NCBI RefSeq assembly: GCF_026571515.1
Contig: NW_026862559.1
Span: forward strand, 1-64,000
Length of the DNA: 64,000 nucleotides
Direction: 5' to 3'
From: Ruditapes philippinarum
Taxonomy: Eukaryota
The position numbers were made by a program, and so were the translations under genes. Below the pieces are notes generated by a model. That model worked only from the letters and a program-made list of their open reading frames with translations. It did not search any database and had not been told where the DNA came from. This document shows positions 30,001 to 61,940 of this stretch, one piece after another. Each line of letters starts with the position of its first letter. Positions within the stretch are counted from its first letter, which is position 1.

Positions 30001-33000
30001 TGCACACCTGGGTTCCTTGAACCATACATAACCGGACATGGATATGAACTCCTGGCCCGATTCCATCCCAATGCAATCAAGTCCTCCCATAAGCATGATA
30101 TTGCTTATTTTTTTCTCTTTTAGCTTCTTTTCATGAAGCTGCTACAGTAAGCAGTGCTCATTTATATTTTTTTTTATATTTTAAGCCACTCGAACACGTG
30201 ACAGACCCAGTCTCACACCATAGACCATCACCTTCTTAAAATAAGTAAGGCATATGTAATATTGATTTTTAGGTTTGTAAATGATGAATCTAATAAACGA
30301 TCAAAATTTTAAGGTTTGTATAATAAATGAAAACTTTTTAAAAAAAATCCTACCCGGACATGGTTTCATGGAACAATTCCTATACTCGATTCCGCTTCCA
30401 ATACAATCAAGTCCTCCATGAGCTGGTGCCGGGTCATCACACGCTCGCACTCTTACCTGTTGACTTTTGCCACAAGTCCTTTCACACATAGACCAATCAC
30501 CCCAAGCTCCCCAAACGCCATCCACTGCAATGAGTAAAAGGGTTATTCTATATACATTTTCTTACATTACGATATTTCCATAGCAACGGAGGCAATATTT
30601 CGCGCATGCTGGTATTACGTAGGGCAAAAAGTGATATTTGACCAACCAATGGAAAATATCAACATCATGATCGAATCCTTAAAAACCGCTAACTAAATGT
30701 TTTGAAGAAAAAAAAACACAGCAAACATGCGAGCAGTAAATAGGCTTTCTGTTTAAAGTATCATTAACAGAAACAATTATATCTATATATTTTTCTGGAA
30801 CAAAAATAAATACTGTACAAATAAATGTTTTGGACCTTTATAAAAAGATATTTAACAACGATGACGAACTGCTTCCAAGTGCGGTCTCTTGATATGCTTT
30901 TAGTTTTCTTTTATATGAATGATGAGTAGAAATGGCAATAAGAATTAAGTATGAAAATGTGAATATTTTCTGGCTCATTATAAAATCATCACCTTTATGT
31001 CTTAAAAATTATACTATTAGCAATATATTATTCTTAAGTGAAATAACTGAGACATGTCTATGAACGTCTACATATCTACATATATTTCTGTGAAGGACAC
31101 TGGTTTCTTTACTTAATATTGCGCATGCGCGAATAAACAATGCTTCCCATTGATTTTGCAAAGCAATGAGCGCATTATTAAAATAATTTAAGACTTATTT
31201 CTTTTATTTGTGGAAGCATACTGTAACACATTTGGATCGACATTTTCATTGCACTTACTTAAATAGCGTGTATCTAATTCAGAAAGAAGACTTTGTGGAC
31301 GATAATAGAATAACAATATCCACTCCAATTCAAAATCACCGATTGTTTTGTTAAACATCTCTCCTACGATTTTATTAAATAAAAAACAATCTTTTAAATA
31401 GTCTTATGTTGGAATTGAGAAGGGGGGGGGGGCACTTTACGTACCGAGATCGCAAAGTCCACAAAATTTTCGGCAGACGATTTTCGCGTGGTGAACATAT
31501 CCGCATATGTTGAATGTACTGCTGATCAACGGACAATTGTAGTCAGGACTGTCTACGCATGAACCGGAAGTTGTGATAGCTGTAAAATATATAGTAATAG
31601 CTGAACCATATAGAGTTATAGCTTCCAAACATATAGTATTTTAATTTCAAATATAGAGTTATAGCTGTCAAATATATAGTTACTGCACTTTAAATATATA
31701 AAATTAAAATTCTATAGTGGAAAATGAAATAAAAATATTAAATTCATCGCTTGTTTGTTTGTTGTTGTTGTTTTTTCTATTTATTTTTGTTTGGGGGTAT
31801 GGTTTATATTTTCATTTAACATTATAAAATTCAATATATTTCACTCGCCGTTCCGACTCGTAAACTAAAGGGAATTTTAAAATGTTTCCTTAAAAGATAT
31901 TCCATGTTTCACTCGACGGAAAAATATTCTGTTAGTAGCTGTAAAAAAGTCGAGTTATAGTTGTAAGTTATAAAGTTACTGCTGTATAATATACACATGC
32001 AGTTATGCATATTGCTGTAAAATATAGAATAACAGTTGTAAAATAAAGTTATAGGTCTAACATATCAAATATATAGTTTTAGCTGAACAATATATAGTTA
32101 CTGATGTAAATATATAGTTACTGTGTAAATATATAGTTACTGATGTAAATATATAGTTACTGTGTAAATATGTAGTTACTGTGTAAATATTATTAATACT
32201 GGTAGTTGTAGCTTTAGAATATGGAGTTATAGCTGTAAAATTATAACATCTGTAAAATATATACAAATTCATGCTTGTTGCTTTAAATGAGTAAGTTACA
32301 GCGGTAAAATATATAGTTTCAGCTGTAAATAATAGAGTAACAGCTCTAAAATATATGGTTACAGCTGTAAAATTAAGAGAAACTGGTTACTGTTGTAAAA
32401 TATATATGCTGGTAGTTACAGCTGTAAAATACATACAAATATGCAGTAATGCTTATTGCTTTAAATAATATAGTTACAGCTGTAAAATACATACAAATAT
32501 GCAGTTATGCTTATTGCTTTAAATAATATAGTTACAGCTGTAAAATACATACAAATATGCAGTAATGCTTATTGCTTTAAATAATATAGTTACAGCGGTA
32601 AAATACATACAAATATGCAGTAATGCTTATTGCTTTAAATAATATAGTTACAGCTGTAAAATACATACAAATATGCAGTTATGCTTATTGCTTTAAATAA
32701 TATAGTTACAGCGGTAAAATACATACAAATATGCAGTAATGCTTATTGCTTTAGATAATATAGTTACAGCTGTAAAATACATACAAATATGCAGTAATGC
32801 TTATTGCTTTAGATAATATAGTTACAGCTGTAAAATACATACAAATATGCAGTAATGCTTATTGCTTTAGATAATATAGTTACAGCTGTAAAATACATAC
32901 AAATATGCAGTAATGCTTATTGCTTTAAATAATATAGTTACAGCTGTAAAATACATACAAATATGCAGTTATGCTTATTTCTTTAGATAATATAGTTACA

Positions 33001-35263
33001 GCTGTAAAATACATACAAATATGCAGTTATGCTTATTGCTTTAAATAATATAGTTACAGCTGTAAAATACATACAAATATGCAGTAATGCTTATTGCTTT
33101 AAATAATATAGTTACAGCTGTAAAATACATACAAATATGCAGTAATGCTTATTGCTTTAAATAATATAGTTACAGCGGTAAAATACATACAAATATGCAG
33201 TAATGCTTATTGCTTTAAATAATATAGTTACAACGGTAAAATACATACAAATATGCAGTAATGCTTATTGCTTTAAATAATATAGTTACAACGGTAAAAT
33301 ACATACAAATATGCAGTAATGCTTATTGCTTTAAATAATATAGTTACAGCGGTAAAATACATACAAATATGCAGTTATGCTTATTGCTTTAAATAATATA
33401 GTTACAGCTGTAAAATACATACTAATATGCAGTTATGCTTATTGCTTTAAATAATATAGTTACAGCGGTAAAATACATACAAATATGCAGTAATGCTTAT
33501 TGCTTTAAATAATATAGTTACAGCGGTAAAATACATACAAATATGCAGTAATGCTTATTGCTTTAAATAATATAGTTACAGCGGTAAAATACATACAAAT
33601 ATGCAGTAATGCTTATTGCTTTAAAAAATATAGTTACAGGGGTAAAATATACATTTGCAGCACTGTTACAACTGTTAAATATAAAGATATCGATGTAATA
33701 ATTATATTATCAATTAGATTTTAAGCATATGTAAAACTATTGATGACTTTGCCGTTAACTCTGATGAATATCCGACTTAAATTCGGTTTCAACACTCATA
33801 GAACTTATTAGTATATAGATATCGTATTGTTTACTTTTATATCTACAAATGTAGATATTTTAGGTAAAATTTTACTTGATATATTTGAAAAAAAAGCTTG
33901 TCAACAACTGCCAGCACTAAATGACTATTTTTTACATGTTAGTTTCTTAGCGTATGTTAGTTCGAGGTCCAATTCGAAAGGGCCGAAAAGGTGCGATTGT
34001 TCCGTCAGTCTGCTGATAAGGACTATGGTAATGAATAAGGGACAAGGTGTTCCGATTGTTTTGAAATCTGATGTCATTTAATACAATCTCAGTTACCAAC
34101 ATGCATTTTTGCAATCGGAGCATCTCGGGTATTTTTCATAAGACAGACGGAAAAGGGCCTTTTTGGTTACATTTTTTTTTGTACAACATGTAGAAGGGAC
34201 TCTGGTTAAAAGGGGATGTGGATAATAAAGCAGACGAAAAAATTGCTTCAAATCGTACCGTTTTTAATGAATTAAATTATTTGTTAATGTGAAGAGGAAT
34301 GAAAAAGTGATTGAACGTAACAATTCAGAAAAAGATGTCCGCATGTATATGAAAATAAAATGTTAGTTAAAATTGTATTTCAAACTAATTTGGTATAAAA
34401 TAATCGTAAGGAAAGATATAATATTTACTTCCTCCAGAGTGACTGCATACGTCTCTATTGCAGTAATCGATAGAACAGCACTGATTACATCCCGTTGGAT
34501 TTGCAATGAAAACTCTTCTCTTAAGATCTCGCCCAACGAGACTTCCTCCTGAAGATGTATGCCCATAGCATTGCTATATATGGAATTGCAGAAAATATAT
34601 ACCTTTTGAAACACATAACTTATTAAATGCTATGATTGTGGCGGGGCGAAAAGGTGAAATTAAAAAATAATCAAATTGTTACAAAGATATGTATGGATGG
34701 ATGGATGGATGTATGGATGGATGGATGGATGGCTGGATAGATGGAAATTCTAAAGAGATATTTGGTTATTCCTTTGATCTTCTTTTGATCTTTTTATCCT
34801 TACAGTCAACCTATTTAAACCCACATTACCTTTAATGACTTACATTTGGTATGTAATAAATCTCATAATGTTAAATTTGAAAACAAAGACTTTTTCCACA
34901 ACGTCTCCCTGTGGACAGACAGACAGACAGATGGACGGACGGATGGATTAAAATCTCAACAAATATTATTTTTTCACTTCTGATACTTCTTTGCAAATCT
35001 TATTTTACATTACAATTTCGCCCCCATTACTTATGTTCATTCAAGTAACATTTATATGTATCTGATTTATGTTCTATGTAGATGTATGTGTTTAAAACAT
35101 ACCGCTGAGGGACGACATCCTAGACTGTATACAACACTGCTTCCAAAGTCGTCTGCTTTTGTATAACAATGCTAAAAAAATATAAATAGCAAATAAAAGT
35201 TACTTCCATTTACCACCGTTTTAGTGTTCATCTCCCTCAGTTTTTTTTTTTTTTTTCTGTTCT

Positions 35264-35298
<35 letters not shown>

Positions 35299-40351: not shown

Positions 40352-40950
40352 ACAATTATTGACTAGTGAGCCATTGAATATGATGTGATATTCACCGGTA
40401 GATGACATATTGACCGAGGCGATAGCCGAGGTCAATATGACTTTCTGCCAGTGAATATCACATCATATTCAATGGCTCACTAGTCAATAATTGTTTTATT
40501 ATATGTATAGGCTAAGAATTAAAAAAGAAATCACGAAAAAGTACAACTTTATATACATGTACAAATTTTGCCTCGTTGAAGCGCGGGAAAAAAGACGCAC
40601 GTGCGAGGCGTGCAACGACTACGCGAACGCTGCGCATACAAAAGTAATTCAAGTTTATACTCATCGATGCGGTTTAGCCTTTAAGTATAACAGTAAAGTA
40701 ATGATATTTCAATCGAGAAATATGCTATAAAGAACAAAACGCAACAATTATTTTTTAATTAACACAAGTAATTAACAGTCTACGGTGTATGGTCATTGAA
40801 TATGAGTCTCAATCTATTTTTAGACTTGGAAAATCCAATTCAGCCAGTTAATATGATACTACACCCAGTGAATATGATTTTATAAAAAGTTCTGTTGACT
40901 ACAGTTTGGACCAATGAGATTGCAGCTATTTTTAGATCAAATAATAAATT
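40352..40950. mobile_element. Non-autonomous element with a 143-bp near-perfect palindrome (40352-40494)
   Basis: acaattattgactagtgagccattgaatatgatgtgatattcac ... gtgaatatcacatcatattcaatggctcactagtcaataattgt around a central ccgaggcgatagccgagg. The right boundary is approximate. Confidence 0.6.
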
Positions 40951-43004: not shown

Positions 43005-43105
43005 CAGTCAGCGTCCTTGCACGCCTCGGTCCTCTGTGTTCGAATCCCGCTAGTAACTTTTGGATACTTTCATGTGAGGATGCCTCCCAGCAAGCTCACG
43101 GCAGA
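43005..43105 (+). mobile_element. tRNA/Meta-type SINE 5' fragment
   Basis: B box GTTCGAATCC followed by tttggatactttcatgtgaggatgcctcccagcaagctcacgg. Confidence 0.55.
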
Positions 43106-43219
43106 TTATATAAAACAAAAGGATAAGCTTTATTGTACTAACATTTGCCATAAATATGGAACAAAGCCAAAAGATCCGAACAGGTCGTTATTATGAGGCT
43201 GCTGTGATTAAGCTAGTAC

Positions 43220-43500
43220 TTGACTGATTGATTGATTGAATGATTGACTGACTGATTGACTGACTGATTGATTGAATAATTGTGTGATAAATTGATTGAA
43301 TGAGATTTCAACTGAGGTAATATTTGATTGATTAATTGATTGATTGACTCTTTCGGCTGCTTTATCTGTTTGATTGGTTGATATTGCAATTGATAATTTA
43401 TTAATTGTTGATTAAAAGTTTATTAATTGATTGATTGGTTGAATGGTTGGTTGATTGATTGATTGATCGATTGATTGATAGGTTGGTCGCTTGCTTGAAT
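43220..43500. repeat. Degenerate (GATT/GACT)n microsatellite
   Basis: Direct reading. Confidence 0.85.
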
Positions 43501-44020
43501 GAATGATCATTTAGTCATTTTTTTCATTTGTTTTCAGAGCAATTCGGAAACTAACGTTACACAATTTCCAATTTTAAGTGAGACAAATTCGTTACATATG
43601 GTTAATATACATGTATTTTATGACCTTTGTTTTTTATCGTCTGCTGTTGACATCCTTTACATATTACATACTTATTTCTTCTAGCAACAATGAAATATTT
43701 TAGTTTCTGTTTTTTTCGCGTTTTACTTAAGCAGAAAAGTTGAACAAAAAGTTGTAAATGGAGACCTGCGGATTGGTTGAACAGAAGAGAACAGAATAAA
43801 ACAGAAAAGAACAACATAAATATCTTTTAACAGGGCTATGATGGAAAAAGTAAGCAATATTTCTTATCGTCATGTTTTACTTTTTAAAATAATTCTTTTT
43901 ACATAATTATATATGTACTTTACAAAATTTTATTGACAAAAAAATCCACCAGGAAAGCAGTAGATCTATTTCAATTATAAGTTTGCAGAAAATTTCTGCG
44001 AGTTCTAACCGACATAGATT

Positions 44021-47000: not shown

Positions 47001-50000
47001 TACATTAAGATAAACTTGCAGGGAAATTTTCAAATCAATTACAATGTTTAAATTCCTAAACATTCTTGAAGCTTTTTAGAAAATTTGACTTTCTTGTTAT
47101 GGGTATAGAGCGTTGTAGGGTATTATGAAAATCAAACTGCAGGCCAAGTACTGAGACTTTGAGAAAAGTAAAAATATTCAAGATAAAAGTAATAATTTCC
47201 ATGTTATGTGTGATTTATGACTGATTTGCATTATTTTTCACCATACTTCTACCATGTTATTAACGCCGTAAGGGTTATTTTGACCTCTTTTTTTGTTAAT
47301 AACATAGGTTGTATGTGAAAATTGTTTTCTCTGTTCACTTCACTTAGTACATTTTCAAAATGTCATGAAAATTAGCATTTATCTGGAGACCTGCTGCTTT
47401 AAGGGGGGAGAAAAGTTACCTTGTTTTAAGTGGTGTAGTTCCCTTCCAGCAGTTGTTTTGTATTGTTAAATATATTAAACAGTATGATATAATTATATAT
47501 CAGATAAGACGTAGCGACAAAATTATGGTATAACACAGCAAGTCCACCCAATAAATCAAAGATTAACTGATTTCATTTTCAACTTCCTACAGTTTCCATT
47601 TTAGGTTGGGATTGAGAGTTGGCAGAGTTCCAACATATAGTTTTTGTTCCTTACTGTGAAATGATTTAATCGAAACTTTAGTCACGTAGAATTCTCCACT
47701 ATTCCCTTTGGTGGAGGGTTAATTGAACTTCTGCACTTTTTGGGGAGGTTTGGTTAAACAATCCCTTGTTAAAAATAGGGCATATCTTTTACACAAATTC
47801 AGCAGGGAAAGCAAATATAATATTATAATTATATTGTATATGTTTCAGATTGTATACGTATTTTGAGAAATTTCATGAAGTGTTACAAAAGAATGGTGAT
47901 ACTTTGCAAAGTTTACCAACTGACTTTATAGATCAGTTATTGGGGAAACTTGTTCCTGACAGTGGTGTCCTTAATGTTTCACAGATTCTTCTTTTATCAA
48001 AAGGTAATCAGATTTTAAACATCTATTTTAAAAATAAACAACAAAAAATGGGGTGGGAGAGTTAAATGTCTAAACATATAAGAATAACTCAAACATTTTT
48101 TCTTTCATTCTTTAATTTGCAAGACATAAAAAGGACTCCAATGAGGTTTTTTGACATTGCAGAACTGTAAATAATTTTTTGAGGTTAATGATCTATTTGA
48201 TTCAGGTTAAGCCCAATATTTTGTATGCACAATTTCAGATCATGCACTCATTCCATTTATCCGGAATAATTAGTCCAATTGTGAAAAATGACCCAAATTG
48301 AAAAATGATGCAATTGGACTAAGAATAGCACAAAAAAAAATTAATTTGTTTCTCAAGTATATTTCTCAATCTTTTTGTTTTAAGTGCCCGTGCTGACCTA
48401 TGTAAGAAAACTTAGATTTAATGTTTTAAGCTCTTGGACTTTAGTGAAGTTCCTGTAAGATTTTAAATATTATTTTCACATTCTATAAATGATATATTTT
48501 ACTCATGATTTTTCAGAATTTCCCTTTAACTTGTTAATTGACAGTATAACAAGTTATGTTTCAAGCATACATGATTTGCCAAGTTCTGATGTTGACAAGT
48601 TGTGTAGCACAGATGATACAACTTCCTCACAATCTCTGGTAATTAATGGTTATTTACATATATATCTTTATTTAACACATGTATAGAATTATTCTGGTTT
48701 TAGTTTTGATACTGTTTAACCCTTCTTTTTCTTCCAGAACTTTAATCAAAGTGTATTTATCATATAATCTTTAACCAAATCTAAAGTAAAATAAAGAAAA
48801 GTTTCTGAAGCATCAGATGATATAAAATCCTCAGACAAGCAGATTGAACTGTAAGTGTTACAGTTGTACCTGTATCGTTGCCATCATTTAGCTATCATTG
48901 TCGAAGAGTTTTTTTATTGTTGGTTTTTTAGATGGATTGAATCAAAGTAAAGGTAACAAAAGATGGTTTAATATATACTGTCCTTATCTAACAGACACAA
49001 TTTAATCAGTGTCATCAATTTCCTTTCATTAATTCTGTTTTCGTTTCGCTTTTAAGGATCTCCAATTTTTATGCCCCTTTTTATGAGGAGAGGTAATAGA
49101 TATGCCTTTGTTCATCTGTCTCTTCTCCCAGGGGGGGGGGGGGGTAATAGTTATGCCTTTGTTCATCTGTCTCTCGTCTCAGGAGGAGGGGAGGTAATAG
49201 ATATGCCTTTGTTCATCTGTCTCTCCTCTCACGAGGAGGGGAGGTAATAGATATGCCTTTGTTCATCTGTCTCTCATCGTAGGAGGCGAGCTAATAGATA
49301 TGCTCTTGTTCATCTGTCTTTCCCCTACGAGGAGGTGAGGTAATAGATATGCACTTGTTCATCTGTCTTTCCCCTAGGAGTAGGGGAGGTAATAGATATA
49401 CCTTTGTTTATCTGTCTTTCCCCTTAGGAGAAGGGGAGGTAATAAATATACCCTTGTTCATCTGTCTTTTCCCTAGGAGAAAAGGAGGTAATAAATATGC
49501 CCTTGTTAATCTTTTTTCCCTTAGGAGAAGCGGAGGTAATAAATATGTCCTTGTTCATCTGTCTTTTCCCCAGGAGAAAGACAGGTAATAAATATGCCAT
49601 TGTTCATCTGTATTTCCCCTAGGAGGAGGGAAGGTAATAGATATGCTTTGTTCATCTGCCATTTCCCTAGGAGGAGGGGAGTTAATAGATATGCCCCTGT
49701 TCATCTGTCTTTCCCCTTAATAGAAGGGTAAGTAATAAATATGGCCGTGTTCATTAGTCTTTCCCCTAGGAGCAGGGGAGGAAATAATATGCCCTTGTTC
49801 ATCTGTCTTTCCCCTAGGAGGAGGGGAGGTATTAGATATGCCTTTGTTCATCTGTCTTTCCCCTAGGAGGAGGGGAAGTAACAAATATGCCCTTGTGTAT
49901 TTGTCTTTCCCCTTAGAAAAAAGGGAGGTAATAGTTATTCCCTTGTTCATCTGTTTTTCCCCTTAGGAGAAGGGGAGGTAATAAATATGCCCTTGTTCAT

Positions 50001-53000
50001 CTGTTTTCCCCTAGGAGGAAGGGAGGTAATAGATATGCCTTTGTTCATGTGTCTTTCCCCTAGGGAGGGGAGGTAATAAATATGCCTTTTTTCATCTGTC
50101 TATCCCCTAGGAGGAGGGGAGGTAATATATATGCCTTTGTTCATCTGTCTTTCCCCTAGGAGGAAGGGAGGTAATATACGTGGGTTGTCCCAATATTATG
50201 TGACAAGATTGTTTAAAAGCTAGATAAAACAGGTACGAATTTGATATTTTAATATGTTATAAACCCATATAATTTAAACATTTTCACAAATTTTCAAAGA
50301 AAAATATCAACAAACAACAAAAATATGCCATAAACACCGTGGCAACTAACTGAATCGCGGCTCACGTCCAACGTCAAAAACGGCGTTAAATCTATATAAG
50401 GCGCCTTTCTCAAATACTCTTAATGGCTTTCAACGCAATAATGATACCCATAAATCGTCAATTTCTGACTTAAATCATGTGGTTGTTAATGTCTGTTGAC
50501 TGTTTTGATGGCATACATTAATTTTTTCTATACGCAAACTTCCGGTCTCGTTACACCTGTTTTTAGCTGTAGGAAATAGGTGACGAAGATCGGTCTTCCT
50601 ATCCGTGTTTTCCTTATTTTCGCTTTTTGTAGCGCAACGCTCTGGTTCCGTTTATGCCTTTTGTACACAAGTGCTCAGGATATGTTGCTAAACTGTTCTA
50701 TTTGGTATATTTGTTTAAAATTGTAATATGTGTCATCTCGAAATAGTCATGGAACCTGAGTGACATGTTCACTGTGCCGCGAATTCTTCGAACGTCGCCA
50801 TTTTAACTTTCCTATTTCCTATGAGAAGTGTTCATTTACTTGTTCGTTTCTTAAGTTTTTTAATTAAAATTTTCTGAGTTGATGTAAACATAGCAGCAGA
50901 GGATGTCAACGTGTCTGTCTTTTCCCTAGGAGGAGGGGAGGTAATATATATGCCTTTGTTCATCTGTCTTTCCCCTTGGAGAAGGGGAGGTAATACATAT
51001 GCCCTTGTCCATCTGTCTTTCTCCTGAGGAGAAGGGTAGGTAATAAATATGCCCTTGTTCATCTGTCTATCCCCTAGGAGCAGGGGAGGTAATAATATGC
51101 CCTTGTTCATCTGTCTTTCCCCTAGGAGGAGGTGAGGTCATAAATATGCCCTTGTGTATCTGTCTTTCCCCTTAGGAAAAGGGGAGGTTATAGATATGCC
51201 CTTGTTCATCTGTCTTTTCCCCAGAAGGAGGGGAGGCAATATATATGCCTTTGTTCCCTAGGAGAAGGGGAGGTAATAAATATGCCCTTATTCATCTGTC
51301 TTTCCCCTAGGAGGAGGGAGGTAATAGATATGCCCTTGTTCACCTGTCTTTCCCCTTGAAAGGGAGGTAAAAGATATGCTCTTGTTCTTCTGTCTCGCTT
51401 TCACCTAACCTGCTGTCACACTGACTGTCTGTTCACTGACAAAACAAAGACTTGTTTGGACCGCTGTGTCCTCTATGTGTCTAGACACATTTCTAGTTAC
51501 ATCTTTAATAATTTCTATTTTGATTATGTTTCCTTATTGAATCAAGCATTAGTTGGTACATTCTGACCAGGCATAAAGTGTTTGCATCTCAATTTTTCTC
51601 TTTACTGAACTTGTCACATGTGACCTTAATTCATAAACGGACTGTTCTAAATTTAAAGCTCGGCAAGTCGATTATATAAATTCAGTAAGGTAAGGGGTAA
51701 ACCAATGTTTACATTTCTTTATTTCATATATAGCCAGAAACATCAAAAAAGAAGAAGATGAAACATTTCAATTCAATATGGCAGAATATTGAACCTCTAT
51801 TATGCGGAAAAAATAACGCTGTCGTCACAGACAACATAAACAACAACACTCGTCAAAATAACAGTGAAGTCCCTCCACATCAGGGTAAGATTTGTATCTT
51901 TTATACCCCGGTTAGTTCACAATGTGATGTCTGTAGGAAAAAGGGAGATGAATGGCTTAGGTGTTAGATAACTGTTTTATTTGCCTTTCTATAACTAAAG
52001 CATGCAATTGTCATTGATTATGTAACTGTTGTCCAGGGGTTATTGTTGTTGTGGGTTTTAATTGTAGACCCCACATATATAGTATACTAGATAGTACAGA
52101 GTTCAAAAAGTACTATGTAATATATAAGTATGTAGGGGAAAAAATCTGAGATTCTTTTAGTATAACTGGGTATCAAAAATTAATTTTGGGTACCATAAAT
52201 CATCTTTTGATGTGTCCGGTATATCCATCATCGGAACCTACGATACACTTTCCGAATATATTTATTTAATACTAGTATAAGGTAAAGAGCCTGGGTTACC
52301 GAGGATGAGGTATATCAAGTATATTTCAAGGTACATGAGGGCCCACAAGTAGAAACTGGAACAACAATAACTCAAACAGCCTTAGTTAAATAGATTAAAT
52401 AACCAAAGATTACAACATCCATGTTTATATAACTTTAAGTTATAATTATAACTTTGTCTTATATAATATCAATAAATATAACACCAACATTTAAAATTTG
52501 TGACCAAATAACAAGCATATTTTACTTTCTGTTATTTTAGATATGGAGAGTTTTGAGAAGAAGATAGAAATATTGACGCATATCTTGTACAACAATCCCA
52601 AAATCCTCTTTGCTCCAAATAATACACTTGCCAACAAAATTATACAAAAGGTGAATTACATAAGCATATGAAAACATGTTACTTTCATGAATAAATAAAT
52701 AAGCAAATAAAGTTAACAAACAGGCAAAAATTACAGATGCATGCTTTGGATGTTTTCCTTTTTTGTTTTGAATAATGGCTCCAAACTGGCTGCCACTTTT
52801 GTCAATGGAGGTAAATATTGTAAAGATCTGAAACTTATAATCTATTATTTTAGGTGAATTCAAGCATGGCAATGTACAGTAATATAACATACTATGCTGA
52901 ACAGTGGCAGAAGATGTCTGGAAATATTAGTAAACAGATTTATATCTTAAAGGTAACTAGTGCTAAATGTACATTTTTACAAAATGATGAAGTTTTGTTT

Positions 53001-56000
53001 TGTTGCTTTACCCCTTTTTTAACATGTTAATAAATACAAAAAAGGGTTGTGACTGGTTGCTCTAAAGCAGTGCCCCATACATCATTTCAGTGTAAAGTTT
53101 TGCCCAATACTTTATCTCAGTGTTAAATGGTGTCCCTTGCCTCATCTCAGTATAAAATGTGCCATATCCTTCATCTCAGTGTAAAATGTTGCCCCAAACT
53201 TCATCTTAGTGTAAAGGTTGCCTGATACTTCAATCAAAATCTGCAATTTACGTCTATGTAGGTTTAATTGCTTTCATTTTCCAGAATTTATTTTAGCATT
53301 GTGCCAGTCCTGTGTGATTTAAATATTTTATTTGACCTCTTTTTAGGTCTTTTGTTCCTCACGGATATTGAAATATATCAAAAGTACATATATAGCATGG
53401 TTTTAGGCTTAAATAGAGACTGGTAAAAACATAGAGGAATATTCCTCCTTTCTTAACCCCAAATTAGACAATTTATTAGTCTGTAATAACTTGAAATTTA
53501 TACAATGTTAAAGACACCCATGTACTGGGAAAAATATTTCAGAGTGGAGACATTGCTGGAATGGATAAGGAGGAAATTTCGACATTGAGTCAAGTGTTCT
53601 CATTTCTGGACAACATTGCCTGCGCTTGGCTAAACCTGGTGAAAGATGTAGATATGAACTTCTTCACTGGCTTCAGTTCTGAGGATGAACTAGAATATTA
53701 TTTCTTAAACAGACAGTTCCAGGATAATGTCACCGTTGTGGCAGGTTTGTTGTTTATTTTTGTGTCGCCTTAAAAAGGGCGACATATAGGGGTTAGTTAG
53801 GAGTACCCTTAGGCTTGTCCTGAGCATAACTCAGCCATATTGACAACAAACTTTGTATGTATGCTTCTTTTAATGTCCAGAAGTGCAGTGCACTAGATTC
53901 TTACCTTGTGCACTCCATATATTTTAGTGATTGCCCTTTGTTAATTTTCATACTTTAATTTTGCCCAGGCCATTTCTTCTAAATCATAAAAGCTATGGAC
54001 TTGAAACTTCATACGATGATAGATTTCATTAAGAAACAGTGCAATGCACAAGAACTGGTACTCTCTACTTCATGATTTTTTACTTATTGTTCTTTGTTAA
54101 TTTTCAAAGTTTTTTTTCCAGGCCATTTCTCTTACACTTTAAAATCTATTGACTTGAAACGGCATAGGATGAAGGATCTTTTTGAGAAGAAGTGCAGTAC
54201 ACAAGAACTTGTAAACTGCACTTCATGATCTTTTAAATATTGCCCTTTGTTAGTTTTCATACTTTATAGGCTTGTAAAGAGCATAACTTGGTCACTATAA
54301 GTTTGATTGACTCCAAATTTGGTAGGCAAGCTTTTTTCCCCATTGACCTGAAGTGCAGAGCTTAAGAATCCATCACAGAGCCCTCCATTTGATCTGTCAG
54401 TGTATAATTGTTCCATGGTATTTTTATTATTGATGATATAACAGTTTTATTAATCCTGACATTAAATTGTTACAATCAGTTCAAATGCCACTAAAGTTAA
54501 AGGTACATGTACATTGCAAAAGTAGTGTTTATAAATAACCTACAAAATGCCTATGTGACAGCTATATTGTTGACAAGTCGATACATCCGACTCGAGTTAT
54601 AATGGAAACTTAAACTTTATAGATAAGCAAATTTTAAATGAATCATGAGTCAAGAACAATAACTCACTTTTGCGTAATTTTGAGCAATTTGCCCTTGCAA
54701 GTTTTCATACTCAATTTTGCTGAGTTAGAACTTAAATTTATTATTACTTTTGAAACTCCATAGATGGATAGATATTATTACAAAAATATAGTACACAAGA
54801 ATCGCAACTCTCTTTTGCATAATTTTGGATTAATAACCATTTGTATTTTTTTTCATTCTTTTTTTTACTGTGGCATAATTCAAAAGTTATAAGTTTAATG
54901 AAACTTTATTGGGGGATAATCTCATTAAGAAGTGAAAAAGAAATTTATTTTGTATAATGTTGGAGTTATTGCTCTTTGTTATTTTTCATACTTAATTAGT
55001 TTGTCTAGAGCATGTGATGTTATGTTTATAATACCTTATAAAGCAGTGTAATTTATTAATATTTTATATACATGTATATATTTTTATCATTAGTAACTGA
55101 TTTTTCTATTGTTATATTTCAGGGCTGGTTTTCGAGAACTTTAATGATCACGTGTACACACTGCCGTCACATGTCCGCTATAAGATCAGACAAAACGCAA
55201 CATTAAATCCGGAAACCAACAAAATTAGACCACCATTCTGGTACCCGAGCCCCGGTTCAAATAATTTACTCTACTATGACTTTGGTTTTGTGTGGATACA
55301 GGTAAAAAAGTTAAAATTATTTTCTGGCATTTCCTTCTGAATGCTAGATGATATCATACTTTAATACAAATTTACCTATATTCAAGAGCTTTCCTTTTAA
55401 CCTATTAAAATTTGTCCTTGACCTTTAAGAGTCCTTGACATTCAAGGTAAAGAACCTTTAAGGTTTTTTTTTCTAAATTCCGGACATTTCAACACCTTTT
55501 TCAACACATTTTTGTTGACAATAATTGAGACAGAGTAATACGTCTCTTAAAGGGACTCCACTGAGATTTTTGATGTGATGAGGCTGAAAATAGTTTTTCA
55601 AGATTAATTTTCCATTTGATGTAGGTCTAGACCAATAACTTTTTTGCAAAATTTCAGATCATTTTCTCATTCTGTTTTTCCAAAATAATTATTCTTAATG
55701 TGCAAAATGACCAAAATTAAAAAGTTATGTCATGTTTTCACTCACTAAGAATAGCACGAAAATAGGCTTTCAAATTAATTTCTTTATATAATTTTAATTA
55801 TATTTTAAATATATTTTCAGTTTGCCCAAGCTTTCTATATAAGAAATTCAAATTTTCTGGTTTTAGGTTTTTGAATCCAAGTTGAGTTCCTTTAAGGTTA
55901 CAATTCTAATACTGGAATCATTGTAATCATATTTATTACTTTACATCCATACAGGACCTGGTAGAGAGAGCAATTATTGAGATACAGGTTGGGAAGCCGG

Positions 56001-59000
56001 TAACCAGACCAGGAACTTTCCTACACAGAATGCCATATCCTTGTTGGCTGTGGGATGCGTGAGTTGTCTCCCTTGATACTCTGTTAACTATAAGAGTTCA
56101 ATATTTTGAAAATTAGACTGAAGCTACATTTATCAATTTGAAGGTTTCATTTTGTCTTAGACTTTCTAAAATGTTTTGGACTTTTCATGTACAACTCATT
56201 TTATAATAATAAAAACATTAATGTAGTAATTTATAAGTGATTTAGTAACAATTTGTAAAAAAAGTTATTGTTGCTATTATTAAGTTATGAAGACATTTAT
56301 TACTTCATCTCCATTGGTAAAGCTTTTTTGTGAAGGGTTTGTTATCTCCTAATATTAATTATGTAATTAAGGCACTTGTTACCTCCCCTTATAAAATTTG
56401 TTAACTTATTATGACAATAAATTTTTGTTTTCAGATTTATCTGGCTTATACAACATGTTATACCGCTATGTTGAATTTCAGATTTATCTGGCTAATACAA
56501 CATATTATACCACTATGTTTGATTTCAGATTTATCAGGCTAATACAACATATTATACCACTATGTTTGATTTCAGATTCATCTGGCTAATACAACATATT
56601 ATACCACTATGTTTGATTTCAGATTTATCTGGCTAATACAACATATTATACCACTATGTTTGATTTCAGATTCATCTGGCTAATACAACATATTATACCA
56701 CTATGTTTGATTTCAGATTTATCTGGCTAATACAACATATTATACCACTATGTTTGATTTCAGATTTATCTGGCTAATACAAGATATTATACCACTATGT
56801 TTGATTTCAGATTTATCTGGCTAATACAAGATATTATACCACTATGTTTGATTTCAGATTTATCTGGCTAATACAACATATTACACCACTATGTTTGATT
56901 TCAGATTCATCTGGCTAATACAACATATTATACCACTATGTTTGATTTCAGATTTATCTGGCTAATACAACATATTATACCACTATGTTTGATTTCAGAT
57001 TCATCTGGCTAATACAACATATTATACCACTATGTTTGATTTCAGATTTATCTGGCTAATACAACATATTATACCACTATGTTTGATTTCAGATTTATCT
57101 GGCTCATACAACATATTATACCACTATGTTTGATTTCTGATTCATCTGGCTAATACAACATATTATACCACCATGTTTGATTTCAGATTCATCTGGCTAA
57201 AACAACATATTATACCACTATGTTTGATTTCAGATTTATCTGGCTAATAGAAACATATTATACCACTATGTTTGATTTCAGATTTATCTGGCTAATACAA
57301 CATATTTTACCACTATGTTTGATTTCAGATTCATCTGGCTAATACAACATGTTATACCACTATGTTTGATTTCAGATTCATCTGGCTAATACAACATATT
57401 ATAATACCATGTTTGATTTCAGATTAATCTGGCTAATACAACATATTATACCACTATGATTGATTTCAGATGAATCTGGCTAATACAACATATTATACCA
57501 CTATGTTTGATTTCAGATTTATCTGGCTAATACAACATATTATACCACTATGTTTGATTTCAGATTTATCTGGCTAATACAACATATTATACCACTATGT
57601 TTGATTTCAGATTCATCTGGCTAATACAACATATTATACCACTATGTTTGATTTCAGATTCATCTGGCTAATACAACATATTATACCACTATGTTTGATT
57701 TCAGATTCATCTGGCTAATACAACATATTATACCACTATGTTTGATTTCAGATTTATCTGGCTAATACAACATATTATACCACTATGTTTGATTTCAGAT
57801 TCATCTGGCTAATACAACATATTATACCACTATGTTTGATTTCAGATTCATCTGGCTAATACAACATATTATACCACTATGTTTGATTTCAGATTTCATC
57901 TGGCTAATACAACATATTATACCACTATGTTTGATTTCAGATTCATCTGGCTAATACAACATATTATACCACTATGTTTGATTTCAGATTATCTGGCTAA
58001 TACAACATATTATACCACTATGTTTGATTTCAGATTCATCTGGCTAATACAACATATTATACCACTATGTTGATTTCAGATTCATCTGGCTAATACAACA
58101 TATTATACCACTATGTTTGATTTCAGATTTCATCTGGCTATTTCAGACAACATATTATACCACTATGTTTGATTTCAGATTCATCTGGCTAATACAACAT
58201 ATTATACCACTATGTTTGATTTCAGATTTATCTGGCTAATACAACATATTATACCACTATGTTTTGATTTCAGATTCATCTGGCTAATACAACATATTAT
58301 ACCACTATGTTTGATTTCAGATTTATCTGGCTAATACAACATATTATACCACTATGTTTGATTTCAGATTTATCTGGCTAATACAACATATTATACACCA
58401 TGTTTGATTTCAGATTTCATCTGGCTAATACAACATATTATACCACTATGTTTGATTTCAGATTCATCTGGCTAATACAACATATTATACCACTATGTTT
58501 GATTTCAGATATTATCTGGCTAATTCAACATATTATACCACTATGTTTGATTTCAGATTTCATTCTGGCTAATACAACATATTATACCATTATGTTTGAT
58601 TTCAGATTTATCTGTCTAATACTACATTTTATACCACTATGTTTGATTTCAGATTAATCTGTCTAATACAACATTTTATACCACTATGTTTGTTTTCAGA
58701 TTCATCTGGCTAATACAACATGTTATACCAATATGTTTAATTTCAGATATATCTGGCTAATACAACATATTTTACCACATGTTTGATTTCAGATTTATCT
58801 GGCTATACAACATATTATACCACTATGTTTGATTTCAGATTTATCTGGCTAATACAACATATTATACCACTATGTTTGATTTCAGATTCATCTGGCTAAT
58901 ACAACATATTATACCACTATGTTTGATTTCAGATTTATCTGGCTAATACAACATATTATACCACTATGTTTGATTTCAGATTCATCTGGCTAATACAACA

Positions 59001-61293
59001 TATTATACCACTATGTTTGATTTCAGACTTATCTGGCTAATACAACATATTATACCACTATGTTTAATTTCAGATTTATCTCGCTTATACAACATATTAT
59101 ACCACTATGTTTGATTTTAGATTCATCTGGCTCATACAACATATTATACCACTATGTTTAGTTTCAGATTTATCTGGCTAATACAACATATTATACCACT
59201 ATGTTTGATTTCAGATTTATCTGGCTAATACAACATATTATACCACTATGTTTGATTTCAGATTCATCTTGCTAATTCAACATGTTATACCACTATGTTT
59301 GATTTCAGATTTATCTGGCTTATACAACATATTATACCACTATGTTTGATTTCAGATTTATCTGGCTAATACAACATGCTATACCACCATGTTTGATTTT
59401 AGATTTATCTGGCTAATAAAACATATTATACCACTATGTTTGATTTAAGATTCATTTGGCTAATACAGCATATTATATACCACTATGTTTGATTTCAGAT
59501 TTATCTGGCTTATACAACATATAATACCACTATGTTTGATGTTGTCATGGGTTTATTCAGTAGCTATGCTCGTACAGAAAATTGTCTATGAAAAGGAGAA
59601 GAGATTAAAAGAGGTTTGAAATACTTGTAAATTTTTGTTATCTTATTTTACCTCTTTAATATTTTGCCTTTTTTGTTTTGTTTTCAAATGACTTGTTGGC
59701 ACTCCTGATATTGCATGTTAATATCCCTTAAAATGGTTATTAAGTATTTTTTGCTTTTCTTTGGTTTCCATAAAATATTTTACAAGCATTTATGAACGTA
59801 TAATGATTATAGTATTCTTGTTTATTAAAAATGTTATACTGAAGCAGCATATTCTAAAAACTGAACTTGCTTTTTATGTGTGATATATGTGGTCAACAAT
59901 GAGCGATATAGGATGAATGATATATGATAAACGATATAGGTTATATTTCACTCATTAGTTATGTATCCCACTATTATAATATAAGATTTATTCATACAGG
60001 TAATGAAGATGATGGGCTTATCAGACAGTGTACACTGGTGGGCGTGGTTTATAACTGCCGCGGTACAGATGACTGTTACCGTGGTAACGCTGACGTTAAT
60101 GTTATATTATGGACGTGTACTATCTCATAGTAATCCAGTCATAGTGTTTATGTTCCTGGAAATGTTTGCCCTGTCTTCTATTGCCTTTTCGTAAGTATAT
60201 CAGTTAAAGGAACTAAGACTGAGGTCGAAAAGCCATGAAATTTAAAAATCATACATAGAATAAACAGAAACATATGAAAAAACATAAAAAAATGTACTTG
60301 TAATTCAATTGAAGATCATTATATGGTGTCATTGAAGCCCAAATTGAGTTAAAAACATCTAATTTGTTCTTGTTTTTCTATTGTATTTCAGGTTTTTGAT
60401 TAGCAGTATGTTCTCGCGAGCTAAACTTGCTGCAGCATGTGCGGGTATATTTTACTTTATAACATACGTACCATACATGTATATAGCCATCAGAGAGGAT
60501 TTAACGGGGACCAGGATACCAGCATACATTAAAACTATTGCTGTAAGTAACTGACATCTATACATGTTGGCCCTTACCCTGCCATAACCAAGTAGCACGC
60601 CTTTGACATTATTATAGGGTCAGGCCAGCCTTTATATTCTTGCTAGAAACTTGTAGAATTAAGTTGATTAAAAGAGTAAAAACTGTTGGAGGCAATAATT
60701 AGTCCTTGTTTCCTTAAGCAAGAAATTTTACACACATTTACACTCAGTACTGATTGGTTTCAGGAACAGATTTGCAAGTATGTCTATTATACGCTTATAG
60801 ATTCATACACAATCAAAGTTAAGTAAATTCTGAGTAAAGCAAAATAGTAAGTCACTATAATGTTTCTAATTCACAGAAGGCAATAAAACCAAAATATGGT
60901 TCAGTTGTGAAATGGCCGATAAACTGTCTATAAACTACAACAGAACACCAAAACTAAAATGCTTTGTGAAATAAAAATAATAACATTTCTGAGGGATATT
61001 TTGTCTTAAAAATAGGAAAATTGAAATTAATGAAACAGAATACATTGTATTTTTTATATAATCTCAGTAATAAAAACTTATTTTTCAGGCAATATTTCCA
61101 ACATCAGCTCTGGGTCTAGGTGGGAAGTATTTCCTGTTTTATGAGTTAGAGGGTTCAGGTGTACAGTGGGAGAACCTACATGTGTCACCACGGGAATATG
61201 ATAATTTTAGTCTACAGATTGTGTTGATAATGATAGCAGTAGACACTGTTTTTTACTTTATACTGGCCTGGTATATAGAGAATGTAAATCCAG
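44021..61293 (+). CDS. ABCA2: ABC transporter subfamily A, ABCA2-like; 5' part (TM1, ECD1, TMD1); gene continues past the window
   Basis: Phase-compatible exons: 44021-44050 (tentative start), 44376-44456 ([13 protein letters not shown]), 45569-45662, 46556-46655 ([15 protein letters not shown]), 47849-48003, 48517-48638, 51734-51884, 52541-52650 (NPKILFAP), 52854-52952, 53543-53744 (DNIACAW...QDNVTV), 55123-55301 ([15 protein letters not shown]), 55955-56058 (MPYPC), 59499-59613 ([11 protein letters not shown]), 60000-60190, 60392-60542 (SRAKLAAAC), 61089-61293 ([13 protein letters not shown]). The NPKIL.AP, DN.AC.W and QDNVTV motifs recall ABCA2. Orthology is untested. Confidence 0.88.
48130..48460. 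mobile_element. Degenerate copy of the Kolobok-like MITE
   Basis: Shares aaggactcca..gag, aatttcagatcat, aaaatgacc.aaatt.aaaa, ctaagaatagcac and the gttcct.taag end with 55551-55891. Confidence 0.6.
49085..51395. repeat. ~49-bp minisatellite (~30 copies) split by an insertion at ~50179-50911
   Basis: Unit gaggaggggaggtaatagatatgcccttgttcatctgtctttcccctag. Confidence 0.92.
50179..50911. mobile_element. Probable truncated DNA-transposon fragment inserted at TA within the minisatellite
   Basis: Non-repeat sequence starting TA|CGTGGGTTGTCC interrupts the array. No matching right TIR was found. Confidence 0.4.
53758..55010 (+). mobile_element. HINE/DINE-like element(s), degenerate
   Basis: ttttgtgtcgccttaaaaagggcgacatatagg terminal hairpin followed by ~140-bp degenerate repeats (acaagaact..taactct..ttgccctttgttaattttcatac). 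Confidence 0.6.
55551..55891. mobile_element. Kolobok-like MITE
   Basis: TTAA on both sides, with imperfect TIRs AGGGACTCCACT / AGTTGAGTTCCT. Confidence 0.65.
56435..59540 (+). repeat. 47-bp tandem array (~65 copies) made of the first 41 nt of an ABCA exon plus the splice acceptor; the last copy is the functional exon start
   Basis: Unit ATTTATCTGGCTAATACAACATATTATACCACTATGTTTGATTTCAG translates [13 protein letters not shown], identical to the start of exon 59499-59613. Confidence 0.95.
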
Positions 61294-61629
61294 GTAAAAT
61301 TAGAACTTAGTCTTTTATTCTTTTTAGAACTGGTATATGTAATTAACCGTTCTTCTTGCAAATTATCCTGGATTTTCTAGTTTTTGCATGGAAAATGCCA
61401 TCAACTTACGTTCATCCTATATATCAAATGAGTCACATTCTTTAGATATAATTTCCATTATGCCAGGAATAATGGCATACCAAAGCATTATTTCAGAAAC
61501 ATTATAATAACTGTCTACCATAGCCATGGTATTGTTTCATTATTTAATGAACTTCCAGTATACAAAAGCCAATACAAGACCCATATTATTTTCTTTGTAC
61601 ATGTACATCAAACCATATAGTGATTTCCA

Positions 61630-61940
61630 TTATATCAGGAACTAATATGGTATATTTGGGCCATGGCATTTTTCATTATTTCAGAATGTTATGGTATATT
61701 TAGGTCATGGCAGTTTTTTTTATTATTTCAGAATCTTATAGTATATTTATGCTATGGCATTTTTTATTATTTCAGAATCTTATGGTACATTTAGGCCATG
61801 GCTTTTTTTATTATTTTAAAATCTTACGGTATATTTAGGCCATGACTTTTTTCGTTATTTCAGAATCTTATGGTATATTTAGGCCATGGCATTTTTCATT
61901 ATTTCAAAATCTTATGGTATATTTAGGCCATTGCACTTTT
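61630..61940 (+). repeat. ~44-bp tandem array (~7 copies) derived from the acceptor/start of the next ABCA exon
   Basis: Unit AATCTTATGGTATATTTAGGCCATGGCATTTTTCATTATTTCAG reads SYGIFRPWHF in the phase left by the preceding exon, matching the ABCA motif PG.YG.PRPWYF. Confidence 0.8.

What the first reader, a model, noticed from the sequence alone, without database searches (positions are those of the whole stretch)
31445..61940. Recurrent pattern: tandem arrays seeded specifically at 3' splice sites in three introns of two unrelated genes
Seen: three arrays unrelated in sequence (21/58 bp at 31.6-33.65 kb on minus; 47 bp at 56.4-59.5 kb; 44 bp at 61.6-61.9 kb) each contain a T-rich CAG acceptor plus the first bases of the adjacent or expected downstream exon, in the sense orientation of the host gene. 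No equivalent donor-anchored array was noticed. Inference: this may be a lineage-wide process that duplicates intron-exon junctions, such as transcription- or splicing-coupled slippage or repair. Alternatively it may be a selective filter, since duplications spanning an acceptor are tolerated when the last copy restores the exon. I know of no named system for this but cannot search the literature.
Basis: partly seen in the sequence, partly recalled or inferred. Interest (0 to 1): 0.82.

Follow-up and report, generated by a model that had tools for sequence, protein, structure and literature searches.

The report
Tandem repeats built from splice-acceptor junctions
Three intronic repeat arrays really are tandem copies of a 3' splice site plus the start of the next exon, but this is the known "mirage" type of exon-boundary minisatellite, explained here by slippage between short direct repeats, and nothing shows it is specific to acceptors.

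Summary
TRF confirms all three arrays. The 47-bp unit is 5 intron bases (TTCAG) plus the first 42 bases of a real ABCA exon. At least 14 paralogous copies elsewhere in the genome carry this unit once. The 44-bp array is copies of the acceptor and start of the 'SYGIPKPWYF' exon. That exon lies just beyond the window, behind a 2.4-kb transposon inserted into the array. The 21/58-bp array ends in the acceptor of a ShK-like exon and its periodicity reaches only about 7 nt into it.

None of the three units is a dispersed TE.

The proposed mechanism is not needed. Single-copy paralogs carry a 9-bp direct repeat exactly 47 bp apart across the acceptor. A third acceptor array (76 bp, in paralogs) sits between 7-bp repeats exactly 76 bp apart. 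This is classic minisatellite birth by slippage.

The kind is already named: "mirages" in amphioxus, at both exon boundaries. Donor-spanning minisatellites are known in human F7, IFI6 and CBS.

The scan found this before on other DNA: unverified first-reader notes from other windows of this genome list 13 'donor tandem' and 11 'acceptor tandem' findings. Acceptor specificity is therefore unsupported.

RNA evidence could not be obtained.

The parts
31445..31579 (-). ShK-like exon. Acceptor AG at 31581-31580, donor GT at 31444-31443. Encodes ..ITTSGSCVDSPDYNCPLISSTFNICGYVHHAKIVCRKFCGLCDL.
   Evidence: Read from the sequence. Six-Cys ShKT spacing found once in the contig. Weak Pfam ShK hit, E=0.17, profile 1-37/37. 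No paralog elsewhere in the genome.
31576..31698 (-). Proximal 21-bp sub-array of array 1. Its last unit is the polypyrimidine tract, AG and first ~7 nt of the ShK exon.
   Evidence: TRF; sequence. A 6/7 match of the exon start to the unit has a background of 0.3%.
32067..32373 (-). 19/21-bp sub-arrays of the same motif (TTTACAG-CTGTAACTATAT variants).
   Evidence: TRF; sequence.
32413..33649 (-). 58-bp x21.3 array: the 21-bp acceptor-like motif plus 37 further bases, 97% matches. Unique to this locus.
   Evidence: TRF. The own-genome search finds it only at C11046.
55955..56058 (+). ABCA exon A ([35 protein letters not shown]), single copy here. In at least 9 paralogous loci its acceptor and first ~59 nt form a 76-bp array of 2-11 copies.
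56424..59540 (+). Array 2: 47-bp x66, unit = TTCAG + first 42 nt of exon B. 55 copies carry TTTCAG, and 57 carry the branch-point-like CTAAT.
   Evidence: TRF; sequence; counts. Paralogs carry the unit once.
59499..59613 (+). ABCA exon B, the authentic last copy. It is the only acceptor that keeps the frame open to the donor.
   Evidence: Pfam ABC2_membrane_3 profile positions 163-194.
60000..60190 (+). ABCA exon C.
   Evidence: PDB ABCA1 match, E=2.5e-8. Pfam ABC2_membrane_3 positions 196-257.
60392..60542 (+). ABCA exon D.
61089..61293 (+). ABCA exon E. Its donor opens the intron that holds array 3.
61646..61945 (+). Array 3: 44-bp x6.8, unit = ~8-11 intron nt with CAG + ~33 nt of the start of exon F. 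Older decayed copies lie further upstream, from about 61440.
   Evidence: TRF; sequence. The true exon F is at C11046:64395-64574. The array is shared by the paralogs, at 2 to 14 copies.
61946..64000 (+). Young non-autonomous TE inserted into array 3 (runs to about C11046:64333), with an internal 145-bp array. It is not part of the junction array.
   Evidence: Both ends match about 1,800-2,000 candidate loci at 94-99% identity. TRF.
49085..51395 (+). Control: a 49-bp intronic array in two blocks, unique to this locus. Its unit has acceptor-like and donor-like motifs, but no exon is adjacent.
   Evidence: TRF; own-genome search; exon map.

Best explanation
These are boundary minisatellites of the 'mirage' type. 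A short segment straddling a 3' splice site was duplicated in tandem by slipped-strand mispairing or unequal exchange between two short direct repeats. One repeat lay in the T-rich end of the intron and the other a few dozen bases into the exon. The array then grew by further unequal exchange.

The array persists because its 3'-most copy stays joined to the rest of the exon and to the exon's donor. The upstream copies are donor-less decoys inside the intron.

Shown: the unit boundaries, the single-copy ancestral state, the direct repeats at exactly the unit spacing, locus specificity, and that only the last copy is productive.

Inferred: that slippage or unequal exchange is what acted on those repeats, that the spliceosome uses the last copy, and that the gene is functional.

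The process is not specific to acceptors, and the recurrence in this genome is about what a high minisatellite density predicts.
For: The 47-bp unit is single-copy in at least 14 paralogous loci. Several of these (L009, L010, L013) carry ATGTTTGAT twice, exactly 47 bp apart, at intron -14..-6 and exon +34..+42; other paralogs have diverged versions of the repeat. The array ends with that partial repeat.

Paralogs with the 76-bp exon-A array carry AACTTTC exactly 76 bp apart across the acceptor. The window copy lacks the perfect repeat and has no array.

The units of arrays 1 and 2 (and of the 49-bp array) are locus- or family-specific, not TE-borne (for array 3).

Copy number varies among paralogs: array A 1-11 copies, array 3 from 2 to 14.

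Only the acceptor at 59499 gives an open frame. All other AG-bearing copies meet a stop within 1-44 codons.

The window's ABCA exons are open, whereas most paralogs examined carry stops, frameshifts or exon deletions.

Unit lengths modulo 3 are 0, 1, 2, 2 and 1, so there is no in-frame bias.

Published precedent exists at both boundaries (PMC3087553, PMC3902484, PMC1557585). The birth model is published (Taylor & Breden 2000 and Haber & Louis 1998, as summarised in PMC3389668).

Other windows of this genome were noted with donor arrays about as often as acceptor arrays (unverified).
Against: Three acceptor arrays (exons A, B, F) and no donor array in one gene lineage is more than uniform placement predicts. 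The expectation is about 2-3% per array, so 3 of about 11 locally born arrays gives p of about 0.004. That figure is post hoc, because two of the three arrays are why the window was picked.

The pre-duplication state of arrays 1 and 3 is not recoverable, so their direct repeats are not shown.

Use of the last acceptor, and expression of the gene at all, are inferred.

The donor-array notes were not verified by me.
Confidence: 0.75

Rival explanations
1. A lineage-wide mutational process targets 3' splice sites, or splice junctions in general. It could be transcription- or splicing-coupled slippage or repair, or slippage favoured because polypyrimidine tracts find T-rich partners in nearby exon sequence. 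Junction arrays would then arise more often than array density predicts.
For: Three different exons of one ABCA lineage have acceptor arrays and none has a donor array. In both resolved cases the intronic repeat lies in the polypyrimidine tract, and for the 76-bp array the exonic partner is itself acceptor-like. Many junction arrays were noted elsewhere in this genome.
Against: The direct repeats at exact unit spacing already explain the births without any coupling to RNA processing. Donor arrays were noted as often as acceptor arrays elsewhere in the genome (unverified). A rough expectation from the array density seen here is about 1 locally born array per 9 kb. That gives roughly 1,500 junction-spanning arrays genome-wide, or about 55 in the 802 windows read, which is more than the roughly 25-30 noted. 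The local excess is post hoc.
Confidence: 0.12
2. The arrays are selected features: banks of decoy acceptors that tune splicing efficiency, trigger nonsense-mediated decay or create isoforms.
For: Each 47-bp unit is a complete 3' splice-site module: CTAAT, a T-rich tract and CAG. The 47-bp and 58-bp arrays are highly homogeneous (94-97% matches).
Against: Every upstream copy leads to an early stop. Copy number varies freely among paralogs, most of them visibly degraded. Array 3 tolerates a 2.4-kb TE insertion. Homogeneity is what recent unequal exchange gives. There are no RNA data.
Confidence: 0.05
3. The acceptor resemblance is coincidental, at least for array 1. An AT-rich minisatellite whose unit happens to contain TTTACAG pre-existed, and the ShK exon simply uses the last copy as its acceptor. 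In that case the array seeded the splice site, not the reverse.
For: Only about 7 nt of exon are shared with the unit. Acceptor-like hexamers occur in 3.5-9% of random unit-sized windows. The deep-intronic 49-bp array also has an acceptor-like motif without an exon.
Against: A 6/7 match beyond the AG has a 0.3% background. This rival is excluded for arrays 2 and 3, where 33-42 nt of conserved coding sequence are in the unit and paralogs show the single-copy state.
Confidence: 0.05
4. The units belong to dispersed TE families, or the copy numbers are assembly artefacts.
For: The neighbouring 145-bp array is TE-internal. Mis-assembly of a mirage was reported in amphioxus (PMC3087553).
Against: The 58-bp and 47-bp tandem forms occur only at this locus. 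The 44-bp array occurs only in the ABCA paralogs, at the same junction. The arrays carry internal variants and decayed edges, as real arrays do. Copy number could not be checked against reads.
Confidence: 0.03

Closest known systems
'Mirage' minisatellites of amphioxus (Adh3, globins BflGb6/BflGb9, troponin C, PGBD5)
   Same: Minisatellite-like tandem duplications whose unit spans an exon-intron boundary, with the authentic copy at the edge of the array. Copy number is unstable. BflGb6 repeats the 3' end of an intron plus the 5' part of exon 2, exactly as here (PMC3087553, PMC3902484).
   Different: Copy numbers are much higher here (66 versus 2-6 in the globins). Here the pre-duplication state with its flanking direct repeats can be seen in paralogs, whereas the amphioxus papers call the mechanism unclear. 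Normal splicing was shown by RT-PCR there and is untested here.
Human donor-spanning intronic minisatellites (F7 IVS7 37-bp VNTR, IFI6/6-16, CBS IVS13, LMNB2, PDGF)
   Same: The first monomer spans an exon-intron boundary, so the authentic splice site is followed by identical pseudo-sites that normally stay silent or are used only next to the real one (PMC1557585).
   Different: Those are at 5' splice sites, where the first copy is authentic. Here the arrays are at 3' splice sites and the last copy is authentic.
Minisatellite birth by slippage at non-contiguous short direct repeats (Taylor & Breden 2000; Haber & Louis 1998, as summarised in PMC3389668)
   Same: A segment flanked by 5-10-bp direct repeats is duplicated. 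The period equals the repeat spacing, and the array ends in a partial unit. Seen here for the 47-bp and 76-bp arrays.
   Different: It is a general mechanism with no link to splice sites. Here the intronic repeat lies in the polypyrimidine tract.
Internal tandem repeats remodelling recent paralogs in human segmental duplications (PMC2812944)
   Same: Minisatellite expansions differ between young paralogs and can fall on exon-intron boundaries.
   Different: There the emphasis is on new introns and elongated exons in expressed genes. Here most paralogs examined are visibly degraded (stops, frameshifts or lost exons), and the arrays lie on the intron side.

Membership tests
Mirage (exon-intron boundary minisatellite) | The repeat unit contains the end of an intron plus the adjoining part of the exon. 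| tested here: met
   Array 2: TTCAG + 42 exon nt. Array 3: ~8-11 intron nt + ~33 exon nt. Array 1: only ~7 exon nt, background 0.3%.
Mirage (exon-intron boundary minisatellite) | Head-to-tail tandem array with the authentic, transcribed copy at the edge next to the rest of the exon. | tested here: met
   TRF. The last unit is contiguous with exon B and exon F, and only it keeps the frame.
Mirage (exon-intron boundary minisatellite) | Copy-number instability. | tested here: inconclusive
   Copy number varies among paralogs: 76-bp array 1-11 copies, 44-bp array 2 to 14. Allelic or somatic variation could not be tested because no reads were available.
Mirage (exon-intron boundary minisatellite) | Regular splicing is maintained despite the repeated splice signals. 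| not testable with these tools
Minisatellite born by slippage between non-contiguous direct repeats | The pre-duplication sequence has 5-10-bp direct repeats spaced by exactly one unit, and the array ends in a partial unit. | tested here: met
   ATGTTTGAT x2 at 47 bp spacing in single-copy paralogs. AACTTTC x2 at 76 bp. Array 2 ends ...ATGTTTGAT|GTTG. Not recoverable for arrays 1 and 3.
TE-internal tandem arrays (tandem-repeat-containing non-autonomous elements) | The unit and its conserved flanks recur at many unrelated loci. | tested here: not met
   The 58-bp and 49-bp units occur only at this locus. The 47-bp unit recurs only as a single copy inside ABCA paralogs, and the 44-bp array only at the same ABCA junction. 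In contrast the 145-bp array meets this test.
ABCA transporter (host gene of arrays 2 and 3) | TMD (ABC2_membrane_3) followed by an ABC_tran NBD, with ABCA-specific sequence. | tested here: met
   Exon-by-exon Pfam hits are colinear. Exon C matches ABCA1/4/7/3 structures, best E=2.5e-8.
ShK (ShKT) domain (host exon of array 1) | Six-cysteine pattern C-x-C-x-C-x-C-x3-C-x2-C matching PF01549. | tested here: inconclusive
   The Cys spacing fits and covers the whole profile 1-37/37, but the score is 12.9 bits against a cut-off of 20.9.

The most novel reading that the evidence does not exclude
Splice-junction minisatellites are genuinely over-represented in this genome compared with uniform minisatellite birth. 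One possible cause is that polypyrimidine tracts pair with T-rich coding sequence, such as membrane-protein exons, as slippage substrates. This lineage would then be a second 'mirage-rich' one after cephalochordates. It would offer hundreds of natural arrays of up to about 65 identical decoy splice sites for studying how the true site is chosen.
Probability: 0.15. Interest if true: 0.6.

Novelty: new member of a known kind. Interest (0 to 1): 0.35.

Why it matters
The phenomenon has been described gene by gene in amphioxus and in a handful of human genes. This locus adds two things.

First, it gives a clean view of how such an array is born, because paralogs preserve the single-copy state with its 9-bp and 7-bp flanking repeats.

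Second, it is an extreme natural test case for 3' splice-site choice. About 65 complete decoy modules (branch-point-like motif, pyrimidine tract and CAG) lie upstream of the one productive acceptor.

If the scan's other notes hold up, junction minisatellites at both exon ends are common in this genome. That would affect gene annotation, since gene finders can pick a wrong copy. It also bears on models of intron gain and intron sliding through boundary duplications. On its own, the finding is not a new mechanism.

Tried and rejected
I would not have sent it the 3-kb array in any case, because the tool rules out long repeats.

I did not try to obtain more whole-genome letters through other tools; later own-genome searches asked for no loci.

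TE origin of the three units: rejected.

Hairpin or unusual-structure-driven expansion: two-unit stretches fold no better than shuffles, with z from -0.94 to +0.83.

Reading Canestro et al. 2002 directly: not held. It is cited through PMC3087553 and PMC3902484.

Search for earlier reports in bivalves or molluscs: nothing relevant among the 15 best-ranked of 338 papers.

Donor-spanning arrays in the ABCA part of this contig: none, even at a low TRF threshold.

Exons were searched one by one by reference. The only joining was an in-script frame check.
Full report
**What is there**

- On the minus-strand gene: a 21-bp x5 array at 31576-31682, 19/21-bp sub-arrays at 32067-32373, and a 58-bp x21.3 array at 32413-33649.
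- On the plus strand: a 47-bp x66 array at 56424-59540 and a 44-bp x6.8 array at 61646-61945.

These are a 49-bp array in two blocks (49085-50176 and 50914-51395) and a 145-bp array from 62111 to the end of the window.

**Host genes**

The plus-strand gene is an ABCA transporter. I searched its exons one at a time by reference and searched no joined model.
- The Pfam hits are colinear: ABC2_membrane_3 positions 163-194 for exon B and 196-257 for exon C, then ABC_tran for two later exons.
- Exon C matches ABCA1, ABCA4, ABCA7 and ABCA3 structures, best E=2.5e-8.
- Exact exon coordinates: A 55955-56058, B 59499-59613, C 60000-60190, D 60392-60542, E 61089-61293, F at C11046:64395-64574 (beyond the window, locus L023).

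The minus-strand exon 31445-31579 has the six-cysteine spacing of a ShK domain. It is the only such pattern in the contig. The Pfam score is below threshold (12.9 bits).

**Array 2 (47 bp)**

The last unit reads straight on into exon B...TTTCAG|ATTTATCTGG...CCACTATGTTTGAT|GTTGTCATGG..., in frame with exon A. It encodes [38 protein letters not shown]. The unit is therefore TTCAG plus the first 42 nt of the exon.

An own-genome search found the unit as a single copy on at least 14 other contigs. blastn showed that these are paralogous ABCA copies. They align on both sides of the array, including the introns, at 72-91% identity. Most paralogs examined are visibly degraded, with in-frame stops, frameshifts or lost exons. 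All examined exons of the window copy are open.

Several single-copy paralogs (L009, L010, L013) carry ATGTTTGAT twice, at intron -14..-6 and at exon +34..+42, exactly 47 bp apart; other paralogs have diverged versions of the repeat. The window's array ends with that partial repeat. This is the textbook substrate and footprint of minisatellite birth by slippage or unequal exchange between non-contiguous direct repeats (Taylor & Breden 2000; Haber & Louis 1998; both summarised in PMC3389668).

A motif search picked up 60 unit starts in the array. Of these, 58 are preceded by AG and 55 by TTTCAG. There are 57 CTAAT branch-point-like motifs. Only the acceptor at 59499 keeps the frame open to the donor at 59613. 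Every other AG-bearing copy meets a stop within 1-44 codons.

**Array 3 (44 bp)**

It exists...TTATATTAG|GATCTTATGGTATACCAAAGCCATGGTATTTTCC... at C11046:64395-64574, encoding SYGIPKPWYFPFTSTYWCG. One more decayed unit sits directly upstream of it.

Between that unit and 61945 lies a 2.4-kb insertion (61946 to about 64333). Both its ends match roughly 1,800-2,000 candidate loci in the genome at 94-99% identity. The 145-bp array is its internal array. So a young TE has landed inside array 3.

Every paralog examined has the 44-bp array at the same junction, with 2 to 14 copies and older decayed copies further upstream. The array is therefore old and its copy number is labile.

**A third acceptor array in the same gene lineage**

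At least 9 paralogs carry 2-11 tandem copies of a 76-bp unit made of the last 17 nt of the intron plus the first 59 nt of exon A. Upstream of the first unit the intron reads AACTTTCATTCATACAG, and the exon contains AACTTTCCTACACAG. The 7-mer AACTTTC thus occurs twice, exactly 76 bp apart. The window copy has ACTTTAC in the intron instead and has no array.

**Array 1 (21/58 bp)**

The 58-bp unit is unique to this locus, and the ShK exon has no paralog. The last 21-bp unit provides the pyrimidine tract and AG of the exon. Beyond the AG the exon starts CTATCAC, against CTATAAC or CTATTAC in the neighbouring units. A match this good follows only 0.3% of the CAG sites in the window outside the array.

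So the periodicity probably crosses the junction, but by about 7 nt only. It cannot be decided whether the junction seeded the array or the exon adopted an acceptor from an existing array.

**Chance and specificity**

An acceptor-like hexamer occurs in 3.5-9% of random unit-sized windows on a given strand. Three sense-oriented hits are therefore not chance. They are explained by the units containing real junctions. The motif alone proves nothing, however. The deep-intronic 49-bp array is also unique to this locus and carries CTTTCCCCTAG|G with no exon beside it.

Within the ABCA part of this contig no array spans a donor, even at a low TRF threshold.

Among about 11 locally born arrays in the ABCA family, three span acceptors. 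Uniform placement predicts 2-3% each. That is nominally unusual (p of about 0.004), but two of the three arrays are the reason this window was chosen.

At genome scale no excess is needed. This contig has roughly one locally born array per 9 kb. A rough estimate is about 1,500 junction-spanning arrays genome-wide, or about 55 in the 802 windows the scan has read. This is my inference and rests on assumed gene and exon densities.

The scan's own notes from other windows of this genome list 11 'acceptor tandem' and 13 'donor tandem' findings. These are unverified AI notes, and I could not fetch those loci. They are many and specific, and they speak against acceptor specificity.

**What is known**

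The pattern has a name. Cañestro et al. [quoted passage not shown] Amphioxus globin genes show them at both the 5' and 3' boundaries of exons. BflGb6 repeats the intron 3' end plus the exon 5' part exactly as here, and RT-PCR shows normal splicing (PMC3087553). PGBD5 and troponin C are further cases (PMC3902484).

In humans, donor-spanning minisatellites are known in F7 IVS7, IFI6 (6-16), CBS, LMNB2 and PDGF. There only the authentic site, or the sites nearest to it, are used (PMC1557585). Minisatellite changes on exon-intron boundaries between young paralogs are documented in human segmental duplications (PMC2812944). Among the top-ranked results of one literature search I saw no report of the phenomenon in molluscs.

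**How it most likely works**

Shown:
- The units straddle the 3' splice site.
- The ancestral state was a single copy.
- For two arrays, short direct repeats flanked the unit at exactly the unit spacing.
- The arrays are not TE-borne.
- Copy number drifts among paralogs.
- Only the last copy is productive.

Inferred:
- Slippage or unequal exchange acted on those repeats.
- The spliceosome picks the last acceptor because only it is followed by the full exon and a donor (exon definition).
- Upstream use would be removed by NMD.

Unit lengths modulo 3 (21:0, 58:1, 47:2, 44:2, 76:1) show no in-frame bias, as expected for sequence that stays intronic. The units have no unusual single-strand structure.

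**Limits**

- The organism was not identified.
- Copy numbers rest on the assembly alone.

**Verdict**

It is a new member of a known kind, not a new process. The claimed acceptor specificity is unsupported.

Noticed in passing
L009-L038 (contigs C3248, C7353, C8169, C6040, C8148, C7913, C478, C3973, C13686, C13372, C6577, C1807, C15270, C10714, C14024): At least 15 dispersed, intron-containing copies of the ABCA gene at 72-91% DNA identity to the window copy. Most of those examined carry in-frame stops, frameshifts or exon deletions. In L028, for example, exon F runs directly into exon J. The window copy looks like the intact member. How the copies spread is unknown.
   Followed up: partly
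L010:243-1078, L011:2446-3001, L012:709-1087, L013:390-1061, L016:1937-2164, L017:828-1054, L019:1970-2276, L020:2703-3101: A 76-bp tandem array (3-11 copies in the listed loci; L015 has 2) made of the exon-A acceptor plus the first 59 nt of the exon. It is absent from the window copy. It is flanked by the 7-bp direct repeat AACTTTC at 76 bp spacing.
   Followed up: yes
window 61946-64000, continuing to C11046:~64333 (L023:~333): A young, very abundant non-autonomous TE (about 1,800-2,000 candidate loci, ends 94-99% identical). It has an internal 145-bp tandem array, GCTCACCAGA-like inverted termini and a palindrome GGGCCATCATGGCCC at its 3' end. It is inserted inside array 3. It resembles the tandem-repeat-carrying Helitron/Helentron-like or MITE elements described in bivalves; that comparison is from memory and was not tested.
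   Followed up: partly
window 49085-50176 and 50914-51395: A 49-bp intronic array unique to this locus. Its unit has both an acceptor-like site (CTTTCCCCTAG|G) and a donor-like site (GAG|GTAATA), but no exon is adjacent. The two blocks are separated by about 740 bp of other sequence.
   Followed up: partly
L014:2093-2656, L030:7793-8356, L013:1826-2003, L026:9821-10000, L033:9811-10000 (homologous to window 59883-59955): A purely intronic 38-50-bp array, up to about 14 copies, in the intron before exon C of several paralogs. It is only a 14-bp x2.6 trace in the window. It is an example of a locally born array that does not touch a junction.
   Followed up: partly
L021:1717-2398, L030:3723-4966, L036:849-1750, L037:185-785: A 17-bp array (CTTATAACAATATACCG), 35-73 copies, lying in different introns of different ABCA paralogs. 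Its origin is unexplained.
   Followed up: no
window 53911-54267; C11046:66473-67043, 67468-69032, 70778-71965; many paralog loci: Families of 145-175-bp tandem repeats fill several ABCA introns in the window copy and in the paralogs. They are probably internal arrays of dispersed elements.
   Followed up: no
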